Assembly: GCF_006345805.1 (NCBI RefSeq) | Contig: NW_021834156.1 | Location: forward strand, 4,456 to 68,455 | Length of the DNA stretch: 64,000 nt | Reading direction: 5' to 3' | Origin: Octopus sinensis | Taxonomy: Eukaryota | In this document: one piece after another, positions 133 through 60,214 of the stretch | Numbering within the stretch: the stretch's first letter is position 1 | Layout of the letters: each line of letters begins with the position of its first letter | Notes under the pieces: model-generated | Told to the model about the DNA's origin: nothing | The model's input: only the letters and a program-made list of their open reading frames with translations | Database searches by the model: none | Translations under genes and position numbers: made by a program

Positions 133-1168
133 TGTCATCCCATAAGTTTTGTCTGATTTTACCTTTTTTTTAAAATTGAATGAAATTTAATAGTATTTTA
201 GAATGCTTGAATGAAAGAAATTGCAGAAGATGGTTTGCAAAATTCAGAAGCGGAGATTTCAGCCTTGAAGATGAAGATCGAACAGGGTGTCCAGTTGAGT
301 TTGATGATAAGCTCCTTGGGGCATTACTTGAAGAAAATCCTGCATTATCAGTTGAAGAATTAGTTCAAACCATACAACTGTTCCTCGTCATCTTCAACAA
401 CTTGGAAAGGTTCCTGAACTTGGAAAATGCGTGCCTCATGAATTGCCCGAAAGCAACCGTAGAACCCGAGTTGACATCTGCTCTTCTCTCCATTCTTGCG
501 GACTCATTTCACCCGTTTTGGATAGACTTGTGACAGGTGACGAAAAATGGATCCTCTATCGAAATGTTAAACATCATAAACAGTGGCTTGGTAAAAAGGA
601 AAAATAATCTCAACCACAACCGAGAATGGAACTTCATTGGAAAAAGTTTCTTCTCTGTATCTGGTGAGATTGCAAAGGAGTAATTCATTTTGAATTGTTA
701 CCACCTAATGCAACAATCAATGCTCAAGTCTACTGTCAACAATTAGAGCGTTTGAACCAAGCTGAGAAGAAAAAAGACCTGCTTTAGTGAATCGAAAAGG
801 AGTGATGCGTGACCCCACACTGCAAAGATCACATCACAGAAGATCGAAGAGCTTGCTTGGGAAAAAATTCCTCATCCATCCTATTCTCCCAACCTTGCTC
901 CTTCAGACTACCATTTGTTTCGGAGGTTACAGAATCATTTGAGAGACATAAGTTTCGCAAGCCAGGAGGAGGTCGAAACTAACATTTCAGAGTTCTTCGC
1001 TTTAAAATCAAAAGAGTTTTACATTAATGGGAATAAAAAGCTTGTAAATAGATGGAAGGAAGTAATAGATAATCAGAGAAAGTACATTGATGACTAAATT
1101 TCAATTAAATATAACGTTTGATCACTTGTTTTCTTTATTCAAAATTAGGACAGAACTTATGAACGCTA
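133..1168 (+). mobile_element. Decayed mariner (Mos1/SETMAR-like) DNA transposon with both imperfect TIRs
   Basis: Frame-broken transposase motifs: RRWFAKFRSGDFSLEDEDRTGCP (HTH), VTGDEKWILY (about 531-560) and HPSYSPNLAPSDYHLF (about 872-920); the DNARPH segment is deleted. Left end CATAAGTTTTGTCTGATTTT (141-160) is an imperfect inverse of right end AAAATTAGGACAGAACTTATG (1141-1161). Confidence 0.9.
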
Positions 1169-15826: not shown

Positions 15827-16121
15827 TAATTGAGTAGTTGATGATTATCTTATTATGGAAATCGGTTACCGATACCTGGGTAGCCAATTCACGTCAGAAA
15901 AACACGGTTGAAGTTACATGCCTAGGGCAGAGATCACGTGCTATCGTGTGGAAAAATTTGTGTGTTTTTGAATACAAATAATGAAAGAATGGAGTTGAAC
16001 GACGAATTTTGTTAATTCGTCGTTCAACTCCATTCTTTCATTTATATATATATAATTATATATATATATATAAATGTTTGTTTATATACACACACCATAC
16101 GTACACACATATATATATATA

Positions 16122-17297: not shown

Positions 17298-18361
17298 ATT
17301 TAAAATGAGGGTGAAAAATTGAATATTAATTTGATTAACATCAAGTTAAAACCAGTGGTCTAGCATATTAAAATCTGAAGGTTCAGTAAATTGTATTACA
17401 TACATATGTATATGTGTGTGTATGTATATGTGTATGTATGCATGTATGTGTGTATGTGTTTGTGCGTTTGCGTCGGTGTGAGTGTGCATATGTATGTTTA
17501 TGTGTACTTGTTATTTGCTTCTCGTCACTTGGCAACCGGTATGGCTCCATTTGTGTCTTTGCAACTTCGCTATATTTACATAGTTTCTTTGATACGCAAG
17601 TTAGAAAGTCGACATGACATGACGCATTTTAAAGCTGTCACCAAAGAATCAATTCGTGGTTGGATCACGTATAACATTATATAAGACAACAATCAACTTA
17701 TTGCCTATGTATTTTAATAGATCAAGTAGCGCTTAAGATTAACGCTACGCGCATAGATTTCTTACTATCTTCAACATCCTCATGAATCTAGCAAAGTGGA
17801 TCTTTTATAAATAGCACCTCCAGCAGTCCACCTTTTTTCTCACGCGTTGTCTCTCATGTCAGGGATTATAAAAGTCATTGATTACGTAAACTGATATGTC
17901 GACGAAATCGGATGTCTTTGGAGACGTTTCCTGATTGTCTCTATTGTATTGTTCTTAATTTTTAACCCTAAGTAGTCTCTGGTGGTCTCGGAGACCTGTT
18001 CTCAAGTGTTCTCCACTCATGGATAACCTGTATTTTATTTCCTTTAGAACATAGCCTATACCTCAGGTTATTATCTAGGTAATGTGTTTGCATATCAGTA
18101 GAATGACATTTCACGGTTATTAATCAATGACATCTTAAGTGAGAACTGATACCAGTGAAGTAAATATATGTTGTTTGCTTAAAACATTTCGTTGAGAAGT
18201 ATATTACACAATAGAGTGTATAAAAGGTGAAGGAGGGGAGACTGGCTGCTGTGAATCGAGGCTACGAGATTACACGTCTGGGCTTATATATGCTCACACA
18301 CACGAGCGCGCGCACACATAGGCACACCGTTCACAAACACACATATACATATATATACATA

Positions 18362-18525
18362 TATACGACAGGCTTCTTTCAGTTTCCGTCTACCAAATCC
18401 ACTCACAAGGCATTGGTCGGCCCGGGGCTATAGCAGAAGACACTTCCCCAAGATGCCATGCAGTGGGACTGAACCCGGAACCATGTGGTTGGTTAGCAAG
18501 CTACTTACCACACAGCCACTCCGTG
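18362..18525 (-). mobile_element. SINE family B, 5' half
   Basis: Matches the family B head. Confidence 0.85.
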
Positions 18526-22789: not shown

Positions 22790-23500
22790 AAGAGTGCAAT
22801 TCGATTTTAACAGTTATTTTTATAAAGCTATAATGGAAGTGACAAAAAAGCATATTCGGCATATTTTGCTTTATGAGTTCAATAAAAGCAACAACACATC
22901 GGAAAGTGCAAGGAATATTAATGCAGTATATGGGGATCGGAAAATAAGCGTAAGCCAGTGTCAGAAACTACAGCATAGAAGATGAGTCTCGCTGTATGAT
23001 TTGTAGAGCTCAACGAGGAAGAAAATGCCATTGTAACTGTTGAGAAACCAGCAGAGAAGCTTGGATTTGGTCATTCAACCATTCATCGACACCTGCCTGC
23101 CGTTTGAAAAGTCAGAAAGTTGGGTTAATGGGTTCCTCACAACCTTTCCAAGTCTGTATGCTCGGCCACGTATAGAAAGGATGATATTCCAAAGGCTGGA
23201 GCAGTTTGAATGAGAAACGATGTTACACCCACCGTATTCACAGGACATTACCCCATCTGACTATCATTTATTCTGCAGTTTTCAAAATCATTTGGACGAA
23301 GGAAATGTGAATTCTTTAGACGAGGTCAGAACAATACTGTACGAGTATTTTTTGGAAGAGGGACCACATACAAGTCTACAAGATAGATGGAAAGAAAATG
23401 TACAAAATGAAGGAGAGTATATTTTAGATTAAAAAAGAACTTTGTTCATCTCAATTTAAAAAAAATAAAAGATGTATAAAAACTACATTATTTATGAGAT
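22790..23500 (+). mobile_element. Internally deleted mariner transposon
   Basis: MEVTKKHIRHILLYEFNK...SARNINAVYG (N-terminus) and LHPPYSQDITPSDYHLFCSFQNHL...RWKENVQNEGEYILD* (C-terminus); right end ACATTATTTATGAGATGAC is mariner-TIR-like. Confidence 0.88.
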
Positions 23501-31392: not shown

Positions 31393-31453
<61 letters not shown>

Positions 31454-31617
31454 CGACGGGCTTCTTTCAGTTTCTGTCTACCAAATCCACTCACAAGGCA
31501 TTGGTCGGCCCGGGGCTATAGCAGAAGACATTTGCCCAAGATGCCACGCAGTGGGACTGAACCCGGAACCATGTGGTTGGTTAGCAAGCTACTTACCACA
31601 CAGCCACTCCTACGCCT
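31161..31617 (-). mobile_element. Full-length SINE family B
   Basis: Complete tail, internal (CA)(TA) tract and head. Confidence 0.9.
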
Positions 31618-32267
31618 ATATGGACAAAAAATAGTAATCTCTAAACAGCATATCGGAATACTTTGGAAAATGCCACGATTTTGATAAATATCGTTAAACC
31701 ACTCATACTGTAAACTAAAGTACTTTATTACGCATTCTAGCTGGATTTTAACCGACAAACTTTATTACATTATACTTCATATCATTACCGACTTTGATAT
31801 TTTTGAATGCTTACCCATCCTCGCGGATTTTCATTTAGCAGACTGGATGAATACATAACTAGTCACCAGCAATAATCACACTCCTACATTTCGGCATTTA
31901 GTGACAGCTCAGTAGTACAGTCTTTAGTTCTCAGTACATTTTATGATTTAAAATATGTTTGCAGATTGCAGCTCATCCTTAGTGATATACTTTTTAAGGT
32001 CTTCACGATATAATATGAGTGTGAACCTGCTCGCGCAAACACACACACACACAAACACACACACACATACACACATACTTAGGTATGCATGTATAGGTAG
32101 ATATAATGCCCATCCTCGCTACTTTCACCCACCCGACATTTTAAGCATAAAATTGTTTGTAACAATATATATTTATATTTCACTTGGGTATTGCGATATT
32201 AATAAACTAGTATAGATCTCAATTTGGGTATACTTCCCAACAAGGCGTTAGTCGAGTACAGGGGGCT

Positions 32268-35362: not shown

Positions 35363-35784
35363 TACTCTTACTCTCTACTCTTTTACTTGTTTCAGTCATT
35401 TGACTGCGGCCATGCTGGAGCACCGCCTTTAATCGAGCAACTCGACCCAGGGACTTATTCTTTTGTAAGCCCAGTACTTATTCTATCGGTCTCTTTTGCC
35501 GAACCGCTAAGTAACGGGGACATAAACACACCAACATCGGTTGTCAAGCAATGCTAGTGGGACAAACACAGACACACAAACACACACGCGCATATATATA
35601 TATATACATATACATATATACGACGGGCTTCTTTCAGTTTCCGTCTACCAAATCCACTCGCAAGGCTTTGGTCGGCCCGAGGCTATAGTCGAAGACACTT
35701 GCCCAAGGTGCCACGCAGTGGGACTGAACCCGGAACCATGTGGTTGGTAAACAAGCTACTTACCACACAACCACTCCTGCGCCT
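35363..35784 (-). mobile_element. Full-length SINE family B
   Basis: Complete tail, internal tract and head. Confidence 0.9.
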
Positions 35785-35833
35785 AGAGTTAGACATTTTT
35801 TTTATTATTATCGTTGTTGATGGTGTTGTTGCT

Positions 35834-37154: not shown

Positions 37155-38319
37155 TAATAATAATAATAAAAGTAGTAGTAGTAGTTGTAGTAGTTGCAGT
37201 TATAGGAGCAGCATTAGCAAGTAGATGCCACAGCCAGCGTTGCAGTTACATAAACGTAAGATTTCCCATCAAAACGTAATCATCCAAAGCAAACAAGGCT
37301 TAATGTCTGATTGAAACGAATCTAAAAGTTTAGATTATTTCAATTACGTTTATCTTGTTTTCTTTTCTATGTGTTTTATCTCTCTCTCTCTCTCTTTCCT
37401 TTTTTTTTCTTTTTTGTTGTCTTAAGTGGTTGCAACACGTTCTAATTGTCATTATCTCTGCAACAGAACCTTCATTAATGAAAGCATGCTAAAATAGATT
37501 AATTGTAAAGACACTTGTATTATTATGGAAAAGGCAGTGGAATTTAGATGATGGAGTTCTTGATCTGAAAGTGTTTTTAAGCTGTGGTTTGACGCAATTG
37601 CAATTATCTCTTGAACAGAAATGTATTTTGTCTTTACAACAGCGACGAGTCAATGAGAATGCGCCTATTTGATTGCTAGAAATAGCAAGCAAGTCTCACA
37701 AATAATATTCTGGTCATGTCTATTTATCATCTATCTATCAATCTATATACATACATGTATCTCTCTCTCTCTCTTCTCTTTCTCTCTCTCTCTCTCTACC
37801 TCTCTATTATCTAATCTATCTATCTATTTATCTAGATATCTATCATCTAATTAACTATCTATCTATCTATCTATTATCTATTTCATCTATCTATCTATCA
37901 TCTATCGATCTATCTTTATCATCTATATATATATATATATATATATATAAAGGGGTAGGCACATAAATGTGAAACAAGGTGGAAAAAAGAGTACTCAACA
38001 CACAGAGGTAGCAGTAATATGCTTATTTAAAAGCACCAGAAATAAGTATTATCTCTACATACATATCTATATATTAATATATAATATAGATATATATATA
38101 TATATTATTATATACACAGATATATACTATATATAGATATTAAATTATTGGTGAAGTTTTAATTCAATTATCCGCACCAAGCACGGTTGCAACGCCAGAT
38201 GGTTGTACCTCCAACCGTGCTGTTCATGCTGTGATTTTTGCTACTAAGGTATCGGTTAAATTTTTGATTAATCTACTACAAGATATTCATTTTCTATTTC
38301 ATATAATCTATATATTATC

Positions 38320-38389: not shown

Positions 38390-38730
38390 CTCGACTTTCA
38401 AGAATTTTAGTCGAAAAGATCGACTACTATTTTGTAAAGCCTGGCTTTTATTCTATCGGCATCTTTTGCCGAACTGCTAATTTTTACTGTGTCGTCAGGT
38501 CACAAATATCGGTTGTCAAGCGGTGGGGAAGGACTGATAAGGACAACAGGACTCTCACACAGACATATGTGCGCGCACATACACACGCGCACTCCCACAC
38601 ACACATATACAAGCACACACACACCCACGCACGCGCACATCCTTCGATTTCCATCCACTAAATCCACGCCGAAAGCTTTGGTCGCTTCGAGGCTACAGTC
38701 GAATATAATTCCCCAAGGTGCCACGCAGTA
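38390..38730 (-). mobile_element. Old, diverged SINE family B
   Basis: TTATTCTATCGGCATCTTTTGCCGAACTGCTAA...TATCGGTTGTCAAGCG...CCCCAAGGTGCCACGCAGT. Confidence 0.7.
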
Positions 38731-38921
38731 GTACTGAGCTCCTCTTGTCACTTTCTCTGACAATTCTTTAAAAATTAATGCTATAAATTTTCTCATTAAG
38801 CCTATTGCGTCACAATTCTTTACTATTAGACCCATAATCTTCACTGAATAGTTTCATACAAAGACAAGAAAATGTGTCTCTAGGCTCTAAAAGAAAAAAG
38901 TTATATTCTAAAAGGTATATT

Positions 38922-38953
<32 letters not shown>

Positions 38954-39003
38954 ATATATATATATTATATATCTATATACTATAATATATATATATATAC
39001 GCT

Positions 39004-39099
39004 AAATACAATAGAGGCACAAATTGAAATTGTTTTTTGTGTTCTAGCACAACGTTTTCCTATTGGAAGCCTCTATGTATTATATATATTAATATATAT

Positions 39100-39135
<36 letters not shown>

Positions 39136-39213
39136 ATACAATAAGAGGCTACAAATTGGAAATATGTTTTTTGTGCTCTAGAACACGTTTTCCTATTTGG
39201 AAGCCTCTTATTG

Positions 39214-39250
<37 letters not shown>

Positions 39251-39913
39251 CAATAAGAGGCTACCAAATTGGAAATTGTTTTTTGTGCTCTAGCACAAAC
39301 GTTTTCCTATTTGGAAGCCTCTTATTGTATTTATATATATATCTATATATATTATATAATATATATAGCTATATATATAAATACAATAAGAGGCTACCAA
39401 ATTGAAATGGTTTTTGTGCTCTAGCACAACGTTTTCCTATTTGGAAGACTCTTATTGTATTTATATATATATTATATATATAAATACAATAAGAGGCTAC
39501 AAATTGGAAATGTTTTTTTGCTCTAGCACAACGTATTTCCTATTTGGAAGCCTCTTATGTATTTATATATATATATATATTATATATATATTAAATACAA
39601 TAAGAGGCTACCAAATTGGAAATTGTTTTTTGGCTCTAGCACACAACGTTTTCCTATTTGGAAGCCTCTTATTGTATTATAATAATATAATATATAGATA
39701 TATATATATATATATATATATAGCTAATACAATAAGAGGCTACAAATTGGAAATTGTTTTTGTGCTCTAGCACAAACGTTTTCTATTTGGAAGCCTTATA
39801 TTGTATTTATATATATATATATATATATAAATACAATAAGAGGCTACCAAATTGGAAATTGTTTTTGTGCTCTAGCACAACGTTTTCCTATTTGGAAGCC
39901 TCTTATTGTATTT
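39004..39913. repeat. Tandem array of eight ~87-bp palindromic units separated by variable (TA)n-rich spacers
   Basis: Units at about 39004-39081, 39135-39217, 39246-39332, 39379-39462, 39482-39564, 39593-39678, 39726-39808 and 39829-39913; each AAATACAATAAGAGGCT...AGCCTCTTATTGTATTT. Confidence 0.92.
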
Positions 39914-40225: not shown

Positions 40226-40887
40226 TATATATATATACTTTCAGTATGGTAGATGAGTTCAACAAAACTTTAGATTCAGATGAATATAGTACTTAAGTTG
40301 ACGCACCAGAATTTAGTACGGTATTATCCATACAATTTCAAAGTAAGGTTCCCTGCTGCGCTTGAGTGGGGTCTGACTCATAAGCGACCGTGATTTTAAT
40401 GACCTTACTCTATGTATATACACGGCAATAAGAAAATGGAGGGGATCAAGAGGTGTTATTCATCAATTTTTAGACATTATCATGTCCATATATTTTTAAA
40501 AAATCAATTATAACAATACACATATATGTATAAATATTATCCTTTACATATGTAAAAAATACCAGTAACTATTAAACATTAATATGTTATATATGTATGT
40601 ATATTGTTATAATTGATTTTTAAAAAAAGTAAATAAATAGACATAATATAATGTCTAAAAGTTGAAGAATACCACCTCTTGAGACCCTCCATTTTCGTAC
40701 TGCCGTATAAATTTAGGATAAAACAACGTTTTACCCTCACCCATGTATTATAATCAGTAGAGTAACTGCCGTGCAATAAAAAAGCATTTGTGTATTCATA
40801 ATTGGTTATTCTACCACATTGTATTGGATAGATATTATCCCCTAGATGATTGAATTCCAAACTCTAACTCCCTTGGAATTATATTTA

Positions 40888-58484: not shown

Positions 58485-60214
58485 AAGGGAGGTTCGATCA
58501 AAAGGGATCGTAAAAGGAGAGAAAGAGGACAAAAATAAGGGGGGTTAATAAAAAAAAAATAAAAAAAAGGGGGGGGGGGGAGAGGAAAAAAAAAAATGAT
58601 CAATAGGGATCGTTATCACAGAAATGTCAATATGAAGTGTAAAGGGGGAGGACAGGTGAGGTTACCCGTGGAAAAGAAAAGCCTGCGGAAAAGACCACGG
58701 TAACCTCGGTCAATGAAGTCACATTTTATATTTCTTTTTTTTTTTTTTTTTTTTTTTTGCAAATAAGCAACTCTCTGTTTTCGATTTCTGGGTTCATAGG
58801 ACTCTGCTCAAGGTGGCTTCGTCATTCATACGTGCCATTCTTGCTACATTCACCCATCTTTTTTAAAAACATTCGCTAGACAAAACTGCCTCTCTACTCT
58901 CACTTTCCTTTTCAAGTGGTACTTGAAGAAGTTGATGAGAGATTGACCAGAGAGGAAAGTGTTTGTCTCCAATCCTTTCAGACGCGTCCACCAGATACAT
59001 TCTTTCGCCATAGCCACAAGGATGATGAAAATATCTTCCTTCCGTTTGAAGGAAGGAGGCGTGACAATATTGACGATAGACTCAGCTGATAAACCGACTC
59101 GTCCCACACGTGACAGCAGTTGTTCGACATAAGCCCACAGGTCGGAAATTGTTGGACACTGAACGAGTGCGTGCAGAACGGTTTCGTCGCTCTGACCGCA
59201 TCTCGGGCAGGTCGGCCCCGTGTTTCTCGAGCCGTGTCTGTAGAGCTTATCCCGAACGGGTAGCGCTTCTCGTAGCACTGCCAGGCCAGGGATCTCTGGA
59301 AGTTGTCCATGGGCCCTGGCCCGAAAGTCCCGAACAGGCGGGTCAGGTACTCCTCGTCGACGTCCAGGTTCGCCCCGAGACTCGCTCGTCGTCGTACCTC
59401 CCCTCCACTAAACCTCTATAGAATGCTTTGGTTGTGTTGAAGTCACTTAAGGTTGACCCAGGACGGCCAGAGTTGCTTGAGAGCAACGCGACACTCGCGG
59501 TGCCATTCGCCTTCCTCGGCCTCTTTTTGTCCCACGACTGCATTCCAGTTCGGTCATGGAGACGAGCTGCGGAAAGCGTTGCCTCACAAACGGCGACCAC
59601 ACCTGTTCACCGTCGTCTACATAGAGCCAGAGATTGTCGCAGTCTCAGCGCGTGTCTGCGCATCATCAACCACGGCATGCCCAGCCCTCCTTTTAACGGG
59701 TGTTGACAGCAAATGGATCGCCTGACCATCGGGACGCATCCTTTCCACAAGAAGCGAAAGAGATGCGTTTGTAGTTGGTGATGGTAGCGTCGGGAACAAG
59801 GTACGACGGTCAGGCGGGGTAGTAGATGACGGACGCGATGTACGTGTTCGCCACCTCCGCTCGACCTTTTAGGGACAGTTTCCTCTCGGCCCATTGCCGG
59901 GCGAGAGTGACCACCCTACTCGTTATCTCGTTCCAGTTCTTCTCCACTTGGAGGTCCGGACCAAACCAGACCCCGAGCAACTCAACCGCCGGCCGTCGGT
60001 CCAGCGTCCCACGACGGAGGCGCTGGTGGACGGCATGGGCTTGCTTTCTCCAGGTGCCTAGTCGCAAGCCCACTGACTTTTCCCGGTGATTTTCGCTCCT
60101 GTCACCGCTTCGTAGTTTTTCAGTGTCTCGCCGACCAGCTCGATGTGCTCGTGGCTAGACACTATGACGGTGACGTCGTCCGCGTATGCAGACACGCTCG
60201 TCCCGCATCCCACG
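58373..60214 (-). mobile_element. 5'-truncated, frameshifted L1/Tx1-clade LINE (RT C-terminal half, zf-RVT, 3' UTR)
   Basis: [11 protein letters not shown] (RT motif C), LGVWFG, KLSLKGRAEVANTYI, LFRFLWKG...KGGLGMP, REALPVRDKL...CPRCGQSDETVLHALVQC. 3' end ...GGCTAATAAAGAAACA(TATC)n. Confidence 0.92.

What the first reader, a model, noticed from the sequence alone, without database searches (positions are those of the whole stretch)
39004..39913. Array of eight 87-nt long hairpins separated by (TA)n spacers
Seen: each unit folds back on itself entirely. In unit 3, AAATACAATAAGAGGCT pairs with AGCCTCTTATTGTATTT (17 bp perfect), then an A/A mismatch, CCAAAT/ATTTGG, a T/T mismatch, GGAAA/TTTCC, a small internal loop, GTTT/AAAC-type pairing, and TGTGC/GCACA closing a 4-nt TCTA loop. 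The same mismatches recur in most copies, and spacers are TA-rich tracts of roughly 15-55 nt. No similar sequence was noticed elsewhere in the window. Known: the 80-bp all-TIR MITE Made1 gave rise to the human miR-548 family, and coleoids have an expanded miRNA repertoire. Inference: this is a tandemly amplified mini-MITE (TA|CAATAAG...CTTATTG|TA) that could act as a polycistronic pre-miRNA or hairpin-RNA cluster, an ADAR substrate, or a cruciform array. Caveats: the loop is short for a canonical pre-miRNA, and the copy differences look like homopolymer indel errors.
Basis: partly seen in the sequence, partly recalled or inferred. Interest (0 to 1): 0.75.

Follow-up and report, generated by a model that had tools for sequence, protein, structure and literature searches.

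The report
Tandem palindromic repeat inside TA microsatellite
Eight same-orientation copies of an ~85-nt self-complementary repeat sit inside a long (TA)n microsatellite of a repeat-rich animal genome; they most likely arose by local tandem duplication, and nothing here shows that they are microRNA genes.

Summary
Eight copies (78-87 nt, 88-100% identical) lie exactly at 39004-39913. They are separated by 19-53-nt (TA)n spacers. Each copy folds into a ~37-bp hairpin with a 4-nt loop (z -4 to -12).

The array was built mainly by local tandem duplication, not by repeated insertion:
- All eight copies share the same orientation.
- Start-to-start distances repeat exactly as 111/133/103, giving a 347-bp three-unit higher-order repeat.
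- A GCT interruption recurs before every third unit.

MITE identity is unproven. BLAST and a covariance model found no solitary copy in the 64 kb. No TSD can be read in (TA)n. No transposon in the window has similar ends. No relative was found in any collection I could search.

An RNA role is unsupported:
- Rfam gives only generic sub-threshold AU-hairpin hits, on both strands.
- Copy differences break pairs rather than compensate.
- The loop and the self-pairing (UA)n flanks do not fit Drosha substrates.
- The whole array folds just as well into long inter-unit duplexes.

Copy differences are 29 indels against 6 substitutions. Other repeats in the same window show about 1:7. This suggests unpolished consensus errors in the array. 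The source organism was not identified. Overall this is an ordinary repeat structure of low interest.

The parts
38916..38999 (.). Upstream (TA)~43 microsatellite that leads directly into the array (imperfect; ends ...TATACGCT)
   Evidence: TRF; sequence
39004..39081 (+). Unit 1 (78 nt, most degraded copy; preceded by CGCT)
   Evidence: 88% identity to unit 3, MFE -22.9, 8 one-base deletions + 1 substitution
39135..39217 (+). Unit 2 (83 nt); first unit of higher-order block A
39246..39332 (+). Unit 3 (87 nt, longest and best-paired copy; used as reference)
   Evidence: RNA -45.3 kcal/mol, z -12.1; DNA -30.4 kcal/mol, z -11.5
39379..39462 (+). Unit 4 (84 nt); AGCT interruption lies in the spacer upstream
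39482..39564 (+). Unit 5 (83 nt); first unit of higher-order block B
39593..39678 (+). Unit 6 (86 nt)
39726..39808 (+). Unit 7 (83 nt); directly preceded by AGCT
39829..39913 (+). Unit 8 (85 nt); followed by unique sequence CTGTATG...
   Evidence: (-44.4 kcal/mol, z -11.4)
39135..39481 (+). Higher-order repeat block A (units 2-4 plus spacers of 28, 46 and 19 nt), 347 bp
   Evidence: TRF period 347, score 1300; block A vs B 325/360 identical, against 308/380 and 306/381 for registers shifted by one or two units
39482..39828 (+). Higher-order repeat block B (units 5-7 plus spacers of 28, 47 and 20 nt), 347 bp

Best explanation
This is a short local tandem array (minisatellite-like, period 103-133 bp, with a 347-bp three-unit higher-order repeat). 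Its unit is an ~85-87-nt almost fully palindromic, MITE-like sequence embedded in a (TA)n microsatellite. Inferred history: one founder palindrome came to lie in or next to a (TA)n tract, perhaps by a TA-targeted insertion. Because the same microsatellite flanked it on both sides, misaligned recombination or replication slippage between the (TA)n tracts duplicated unit plus spacer. A three-unit block was later duplicated again. The hairpin potential is an automatic property of an all-inverted-repeat unit. It is not evidence of an RNA gene. At the DNA level the ~1-kb self-complementary AT-rich locus is expected to be cruciform-prone, unstable in length, and hard to sequence. The many single-base indels between copies are probably local consensus errors, so the true copies may be nearly identical. 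Shown: the copies, their folds, uniform orientation, the higher-order period and the anomalous indel spectrum. Inferred: the duplication mechanism, the lack of function and the error origin of the indels.
For: - Eight copies, all on the + strand: + hits are 88-100% identical and - hits 76-82%. Covariance-model scores are 69-111 bits on + against 19-69 bits on -. Orientation is defined by two asymmetric mismatches and an asymmetric centre shared by all copies. Eight independent insertions of a palindrome into the symmetric (TA)n target would agree in orientation with probability 2 x 0.5^8 = 0.008.
- Start-to-start distances are 131, 111, 133, 103, 111, 133, 103, so units 2->5, 3->6, 4->7 and 5->8 are each exactly 347 bp apart. 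TRF reports period 347 with score 1300.
- Block A vs block B is 90% identical, against 81% in shifted registers.
- The GCT interruption recurs before units 1, 4 and 7.
- No further copy exists in 64 kb.
- Duplication by slippage or unequal exchange between short flanking repeats is the standard model for minisatellite origin. MITE-to-tandem-repeat conversions are documented, for example Xstir, the oyster HindIII satellite and BIV160 (PMC6947457) and DTC84 in a clam (PMC3879986).
- Variation among copies breaks pairs. The apparent 'both sides changed' cells come from misaligned unit 1, and the covariation term is +1.35.
- Indel spectrum: 6 substitutions against 29 one-base indels, 22 of them homopolymer deletions. 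Other repeats in the same window show 2988 mismatches against 438 gap openings.
Against: - Unit-level variants do not sort cleanly by higher-order position. u3~u6 are close, but u2~u5 and u4~u7 are not closer than other pairs. The higher-order signal therefore rests mainly on spacer lengths and the GCT marks.
- Unit 1 to unit 2 spacing (131) breaks the period.
- A second, unrelated 63-nt perfect palindrome also abuts a (TA)n tract at 15980-16042. This hints that TA-tract-associated palindromes may be a recurrent, possibly insertion-driven, class in this genome.
- Transcription and small RNAs could not be examined, so lack of function is an inference.
- The rest of the window has a low indel rate, so 'consensus error' needs a local cause, such as failed polishing in the tandem repeat. 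That could not be checked.
Confidence: 0.6

Rival explanations
1. Repeated independent insertions of a TA-microsatellite-targeting mini-MITE into one (TA)n tract. This is the Micron / SaTar / MuTAnT type of modular array assembly.
For: Every unit is flanked on both sides by (TA)n. Microsatellite-targeted non-autonomous elements that pile up into uninterrupted linear arrays are documented in plants (PMC5907723; PMC4486113). Another short perfect palindrome abuts a (TA)n tract at 15980-16042. (TA)n is the commonest microsatellite here, at 3.7 kb of the 64 kb.
Against: All eight copies share one orientation (p about 0.008 if random). Spacer lengths repeat as 28/46/19 and 28/47/20, with an exact 347-bp period. 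GCT marks recur every third unit. SaTar arrays are described as mixes of unrelated families, whereas this is one family. No solitary copy lies in the window, although (TA)n tracts are abundant there.
Confidence: 0.1
2. The array is a transcribed hairpin-RNA locus. It could be a polycistronic miRNA-like cluster, or an endo-siRNA hpRNA cluster like Drosophila hp-CG4068, or a multi-hairpin ADAR substrate.
For: Each unit gives a very stable 37-bp hairpin. Palindromic MITEs have given rise to miRNAs, as with Made1 and mir-548 (PMC1784062). Tandem hpRNA copies made from one transcript exist in flies, with 20 copies of hp-CG4068 (PMC10317233). If the host is a coleoid, hairpins in introns and UTRs are the main A-to-I editing substrates (PMC9699675).
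Against: No Rfam family reaches its gathering score in the window. In E-value mode only generic AU-rich miRNA models hit, at 60 bits or less against thresholds of 76-200. They hit on both strands and often centre on spacers rather than units. Differences between copies destabilise the hairpin, down to -23 to -32 kcal/mol in five units, with no genuine compensation. The 4-nt apical loop, the absence of single-stranded basal flanks (the flanks are self-pairing (UA)n) and the absence of any downstream CNNC run against known Drosha/DGCR8 substrate rules (general knowledge). The full-length transcript folds into long inter-unit duplexes on either strand, not eight separate hairpins. The arm 12-mers are absent from the text-held supplements of the octopus miRNA survey, which is weak evidence because the large files are truncated. 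No evidence of transcription is available.
Confidence: 0.1
3. The array is partly an assembly product. The repeat is real, but the unit number, the higher-order duplication or the copy-to-copy differences come from mis-assembly or unpolished long-read consensus in a hairpin-rich tandem repeat.
For: Copy differences are 83% one-base indels, mostly homopolymer deletions. That is a roughly 30-fold reversal of the mismatch:indel ratio of other repeats in the same window. Fast-mutating (TA)n spacer lengths are preserved between blocks A and B to within 1 nt, while the non-repetitive units differ at about 5% of positions. This is hard to explain by real mutation. Palindromes and (TA)n tracts are notoriously hard to sequence and polish (general knowledge).
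Against: The two 347-bp blocks are not identical copies and have different spacer interruptions, as expected for separate stretches of DNA. The window's other repeats show a low indel rate, so the assembly is generally well polished. Eight units with variable spacers are unlikely to be invented outright.
Confidence: 0.15

Closest known systems
Made1 / hsa-mir-548 (human 80-bp all-TIR mariner-derived MITE)
   Same: The size class and architecture match. Made1 has two long inverted arms with a few unpaired bases between them (two 37-bp TIRs plus 6 bp; PMC1784062). If transcribed it would form a very stable hairpin.
   Different: Made1 is a dispersed family tied to an autonomous element (Hsmar1), with experimentally detected miRNAs. 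Here there is no sequence similarity to the mariner fragments in the window. No dispersed copies were seen. The copies are in tandem, and there are no small-RNA data. No mir-548 match appeared in Rfam.
Micron / SaTar / MuTAnT microsatellite-targeting non-autonomous transposons of plants
   Same: These elements are flanked by (TA)n on both sides and lack readable TSDs. They can form uninterrupted linear arrays inside a microsatellite (PMC5907723; PMC4486113).
   Different: They are 380-1900-bp Mutator-like elements from plants, and their arrays mix unrelated families. Here a single ~85-nt palindrome recurs in one orientation with a three-unit higher-order period. That points to duplication rather than targeting.
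MITE-derived or MITE-borne tandem repeats (Xstir in Xenopus; pearl/DTC84, BIV160 and HindIII satellite in bivalves)
   Same: In these cases a MITE-like unit is converted into, or carries, a short tandem array linked to a microsatellite segment. Palindromes are proposed as hotspots for changes in array length (PMC3879986; PMC6947457).
   Different: DTC84-type elements have non-palindromic core repeats packed between defined flanking modules, and they move as a whole. Here no flanking inverted modules were found around the array. The unit itself is the palindrome, and microsatellite tracts separate every unit.
Drosophila hp-CG4068 tandem hpRNA cluster
   Same: It has many tandem copies of a hairpin in one orientation, with rapidly changing copy number (20 in D. 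melanogaster, 9 in D. simulans; PMC10317233).
   Different: hp-CG4068 is shown to be transcribed as one unit. It is processed by Dicer-2 into siRNAs that target a specific gene. None of this is known here, and no target homology was detectable in the window.

Membership tests
MITE (all-TIR, Tc1/mariner 'Stowaway/Made1-like') | Terminal inverted repeats | tested here: met
   The whole unit is an inverted repeat with a 17-bp perfect outer stem and 37 bp in total. This is trivially true of any palindrome.
MITE (all-TIR, Tc1/mariner 'Stowaway/Made1-like') | Target-site duplication (TA) flanking individual copies | tested here: inconclusive
   Inner flanks are (TA)n, so a TA duplication cannot be distinguished. 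The outermost flanks are ...CGCT|AAATAC and GTATTT|CTGT, with no duplication.
MITE (all-TIR, Tc1/mariner 'Stowaway/Made1-like') | Many dispersed copies at unrelated loci | tested here: not met
   No solitary copy in the 64-kb window by BLAST with word size 7 or by covariance model with filters off. The genome-wide count cannot be tested with these tools. There were no true matches in metagenome, prokaryotic-genome or viral collections. The five hits are unrelated inverted repeats.
MITE (all-TIR, Tc1/mariner 'Stowaway/Made1-like') | TIRs shared with an autonomous transposon | tested here: not met
   No similarity to the mariner fragments (180-1094, 23214-23429) or to anything else in the window. 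No similarity to the neighbouring 297-bp inverted-repeat element. Not testable genome-wide.
Microsatellite-targeting TE arrays (Micron/SaTar/MuTAnT) | Element bounded by the same microsatellite on both sides | tested here: met
   The (TA)n spacers and the upstream (TA)43 tract. The last unit, however, ends in unique sequence.
Microsatellite-targeting TE arrays (Micron/SaTar/MuTAnT) | Array built by independent insertions (mixed families, no fixed orientation or period) | tested here: not met
   One family, 8 of 8 copies in the same orientation, and an exact 347-bp higher-order period.
Canonical animal miRNA precursor / cluster | Match to a curated miRNA family | tested here: not met
   No Rfam hit at gathering score. 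The best sub-threshold hit is MIR7723 at 59.9 bits against a threshold of 200. Hits fall on both strands and on spacers. MirGeneDB was not available.
Canonical animal miRNA precursor / cluster | Drosha-type architecture: ~35-bp stem, apical loop of about 10 nt or more, single-stranded basal flanks, downstream CNNC | tested here: not met
   The stem length is acceptable at 37 bp. But the loop is 4 nt, the flanks are self-pairing (UA)n, and there is no CNNC in the spacers or the right flank. The criteria are taken from general knowledge.
Canonical animal miRNA precursor / cluster | Structure kept by compensatory change among paralogues | tested here: not met
   Broken pairs dominate. The covariation term is +1.35. 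The only 'both sides changed' cells stem from misaligned unit 1.
Canonical animal miRNA precursor / cluster | Discrete ~22-nt reads from both arms with 2-nt 3' overhangs | not testable with these tools
   No small-RNA data were available.
hpRNA / endo-siRNA locus | Long near-perfect intramolecular duplex | tested here: met
   37 bp per unit. The whole array folds at -411 (+ strand) and -398 (- strand) kcal/mol, with long inter-unit duplexes.
hpRNA / endo-siRNA locus | Transcription, Dicer-dependent 21-nt siRNAs, and a target gene | not testable with these tools
   No expression data. No homologous target is seen in the window.
Minisatellite / short satellite with higher-order repeat | Head-to-tail copies with a multi-unit period | tested here: met
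   TRF periods of 103-133 and 347. Exact 347-bp spacing occurs four times. Block identity is 90% in register against 81% out of register.

The most novel reading that the evidence does not exclude
The array is transcribed as one unit and its eight hairpins are diced into endo-siRNA or miRNA-like small RNAs, or they act as a multi-hairpin sink for ADAR. That would make it a lophotrochozoan counterpart of the Drosophila tandem hpRNA cluster hp-CG4068, caught at birth from a palindromic repeat amplified inside a microsatellite.
Probability: 0.07. Interest if true: 0.6.

Novelty: new member of a known kind. Interest (0 to 1): 0.2.

Why it matters
As it stands, little. Short palindromic MITE-like repeats, their association with TA microsatellites, and their conversion into small tandem arrays are all known phenomena, and this looks like one more instance. 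It has three uses.
1. It is a clean example of how a sequence caught between two tracts of the same microsatellite becomes a minisatellite with a higher-order period.
2. It is a warning for miRNA and hairpin predictors. The locus yields dozens of sub-threshold Rfam miRNA hits purely from AU-rich self-complementarity.
3. It flags assembly quality. The indel-dominated copy differences mark a region where the consensus probably was not polished.

Only if small-RNA or editing data showed specific processing would it bear on how new hairpin-RNA genes arise from repeats.

Tried and rejected
- Finding other copies through proteins. The unit is open in two frames, so I searched its translations against the 5.8-billion-protein collection. 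No candidate was found. Exact look-ups of the 122-aa ORF running through the array and of a mariner ORF were not on record.
- DNA pattern scans. A 25-base pattern matching either arm gave 0 hits in metagenome, prokaryotic-genome and viral collections. A looser pattern requiring both 12-nt termini gave 5 hits, all unrelated bacterial or metagenomic inverted repeats with different interiors. These collections are essentially non-eukaryotic, so the negative says little.
- Literature string search for the arm sequences returned 0 papers. The arm 12-mers are absent from the held supplements of the octopus miRNA paper, but the two large files are truncated.
- Identifying the organism. The LINE zf-RVT ORF and a mariner ORF hit only unnamed ENA and Logan contigs at 56-75% identity. 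A run-accession search in papers was uninformative. None of the fetched contigs carries the unit. The coleoid attribution stays unverified. The window is clearly animal-like and TE-rich, and 15.8% of it is microsatellite.
- A composite mobile element carrying the array (pearl/DTC84 or Helentron style). No inverted or direct repeats link the left and right flanks.
- Derivation of the unit from the 297-bp inverted-repeat element 500 bp downstream, or relatedness to the 63-nt palindrome at 15980. Alignment scores were below shuffled controls.
- A window-wide noisy assembly as the cause of the indels. This is rejected, because other repeats show a 6.8:1 mismatch:gap ratio and several 180-230-nt pairs with 0-1 gaps.

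Full report
**What is there**

The region 38916-39913 starts with an imperfect (TA)43 microsatellite. It continues with eight copies of a 78-87-nt sequence at 39004-39081, 39135-39217, 39246-39332, 39379-39462, 39482-39564, 39593-39678, 39726-39808 and 39829-39913. BLAST with unit 3 as query gives 88-100% identity and E-values of 1e-17 to 1e-32. MAFFT gives 88% mean column identity. The copies are separated by 19-53-nt tracts that are almost pure (TA)n.

Each copy folds on itself.
- 17 bp, A/A mismatch, 6 bp, U/U mismatch, 5 bp, small internal loop, 4 bp, a 3-nt bulge, then 5 bp closing a UCUA loop.
- That is 37 bp in all, at -45.3 kcal/mol, against -12.7 +/- 2.7 for shuffles (z = -12.1).
- As DNA it gives -30.4 kcal/mol, z = -11.5.

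The other units reach -22.9 to -44.4 kcal/mol (z -4.3 to -11.4). The observation and its coordinates are therefore confirmed. The one correction is that only unit 3 is 87 nt long.

**How the array was built**

Although the unit is nearly palindromic, its orientation is defined by the two asymmetric mismatches and by an asymmetric centre. All copies share these features. All eight copies point the same way:
- + strand identities are 88-100% against 76-82% on the - strand.
- Covariance-model scores are 69-111 bits on + against 19-69 bits on -.

(TA)n is its own reverse complement, so independent insertions should be randomly oriented. Eight in agreement has probability 2 x 0.5^8 = 0.008.

The start-to-start distances are 131, 111, 133, 103, 111, 133, 103. 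Units 2->5, 3->6, 4->7 and 5->8 are each exactly 347 bp apart. TRF reports the 347-bp period as the best-scoring description (score 1300). The spacers repeat as 28/46/19 and 28/47/20 nt. The two 347-bp blocks are 90% identical in register (325/360), against 81% when shifted by one or two units. A GCT interruption lies just upstream of units 1, 4 and 7.

This is the signature of duplication of a three-unit block, and before that of unit plus spacer. Misaligned exchange or replication slippage between the flanking (TA)n tracts is the obvious mechanism. It is the textbook route from 'sequence between two short repeats' to a minisatellite (PMC6947457). Caveats:
- Unit-internal variants do not sort neatly by position in the block.
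- The first interval (131) is out of period.

**Is it a MITE?**

Only the trivially satisfied criterion, inverted termini, is met.
- The conserved palindrome reaches AAATAC...GTATTT. This is seen where the flank is not TA: GCT|AAATAC at unit 1 and GTATTT|CTG at unit 8.
- A TA duplication cannot be recognised inside (TA)n.
- No solitary copy exists in the window, although (TA)n tracts are abundant there: 3.7 kb, with 15.8% of the window being microsatellite. Neither BLAST with 7-nt words nor a covariance model run without filters found one.
- The unit resembles neither the mariner fragments in the window, nor the 297-bp inverted-repeat element 500 bp downstream, nor the 63-nt palindrome at 15980-16042 that the model picked up.
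- No inverted or direct repeats join the two flanks of the array, so it does not look like the cargo of a larger element.
- Outside the window I found nothing. Translated-unit protein search gave no candidates. Exact ORF look-ups were not on record. A 25-base arm pattern gave 0 hits in three DNA collections. The five hits to a looser termini-only pattern are unrelated sequences.

Those collections are mostly prokaryotic, so the genome-wide copy number remains the key unknown.

**RNA function?**
- No Rfam family reaches its gathering score anywhere in the window.
- With permissive thresholds the 1.3-kb region gives 157 hits. Nearly all are AU-rich miRNA models, and all are far below threshold (best 59.9 bits against 200). 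They fall on both strands, and many centre on a spacer with half a unit on each side. This shows that the models respond to generic self-complementarity.
- Differences among copies break base pairs and cost up to 22 kcal/mol. There is no genuine compensatory change, and the covariation term is positive.
- The architecture is poor for the Microprocessor. The apical loop is 4 nt, the flanks are self-pairing (UA)n rather than single-stranded, and there is no CNNC downstream (the rules are from general knowledge of Drosha/DGCR8 substrates).
- Folded as one 941-nt transcript, either strand prefers long inter-unit duplexes rather than eight separate hairpins: -411 and -398 kcal/mol, z -29 and -46.

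If the locus is transcribed, it would therefore look more like a long dsRNA or hpRNA substrate than a miRNA cluster. Tandem hpRNA copies exist in Drosophila (hp-CG4068; PMC10317233). It would also be a good ADAR substrate. Nothing available here says it is transcribed. The arm sequences do not occur in the text-held supplements of the octopus miRNA survey, but the large files are truncated.

**The copy differences**

Relative to unit 3 the other seven copies carry 6 substitutions, 26 one-base deletions (22 of them in runs of two or more identical bases) and 3 insertions. In 25 kb of alignments between other interspersed repeats of the same window, the ratio is 2988 mismatches to 438 gap openings. 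Several 180-230-nt pairs have 0-1 gaps. The window is therefore not generally noisy, and the array's spectrum is reversed about 30-fold.

Moreover, the fast-mutating (TA)n spacers keep their lengths between the two blocks to within 1 nt, while the non-repetitive units differ at about 5% of positions. The simplest reading is residual long-read consensus error in a tandem, hairpin-rich stretch that polishing could not resolve. In that case the real copies would be nearly identical and the array young. A palindrome-specific slippage process cannot be excluded. This needs the raw reads.

**Context**

The window is AT-rich (27-45% GC) and has no tRNA or Rfam genes. It is full of microsatellites, a SINE-like repeat present about ten times, mariner fragments and a LINE reverse-transcriptase remnant. 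No host exon was recognised, so I cannot say whether the array is intronic. The organism could not be named. The TE proteins hit only anonymous ENA and Logan contigs at 56-75% identity.

**Comparison and verdict**

Structurally the unit is like Made1, which has two 37-bp TIRs plus 6 bp (PMC1784062). Its setting resembles the TA-microsatellite-targeting Micron, SaTar and MuTAnT elements of plants (PMC5907723; PMC4486113). Its tandem amplification resembles MITE-to-satellite conversions such as Xstir, BIV160 and DTC84. It fails or cannot be tested on the defining features of each family.

I file it as a new member of a known kind: a palindromic, MITE-like repeat amplified in tandem within a microsatellite. 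My confidence in that account is 0.6. Rivals are repeated targeted insertion (0.1), a functional hairpin-RNA locus (0.1) and partial assembly artefact (0.15). Interest is low at 0.2. It would rise to about 0.6 only if small-RNA or editing data showed specific processing, which I put at about 7%.

Noticed in passing
window 15980-16042 (plus the (TA)n tract at 16043-16075): A 63-nt perfect palindrome: 29-bp arms, 5-nt loop TTGTT, RNA MFE -44.8 kcal/mol. Its right end abuts a (TA)n tract. It is unrelated in sequence to the array unit and is single-copy in the window. It is a second case of a short all-inverted-repeat element next to a TA microsatellite.
   Followed up: partly
window 40416-40712: A ~297-bp inverted-repeat (MITE- or foldback-like) element 500 bp downstream of the array. 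Its ~83-nt arms are 80-83% complementary, with 131 nt between them and TATA on both flanks. It is unrelated to the array unit.
   Followed up: partly
whole window: The microsatellite load is very high. TRF covers 21% of the window, and 15.8% has a period of 6 or less. (AT)n makes up 3.7 kb, (AGAT)n 1.9 kb, (AAT)n 1.6 kb and (ACAT)n 1.0 kb.
   Followed up: partly
window ~12000, 13550, 18340-18520, 21750, 26600, 31430-31620, 35590-35790, 38430-38740, 46370: A SINE-like interspersed repeat is present about ten times in 64 kb. Some pairs are 92-96% identical without gaps. One copie ends ~180 bp upstream of the (TA)n tract that precedes the array.
   Followed up: no
window 180-1094, 23214-23429; 58853-60154 (- strand): There are decayed mariner-type transposase fragments (HTH_48 hit). 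There is also a LINE reverse-transcriptase remnant (zf-RVT), whose DNA is 81% identical to an anonymous ENA metagenome contig (L001).
   Followed up: partly
window 37719-37946: A long (TCTA)~59 microsatellite has only 75% matches and 10% indels. Several (TA)n tracts also show one-base phase shifts. These may be further signs of local consensus noise in repeats, or they may be genuinely degenerate tracts.
   Followed up: no
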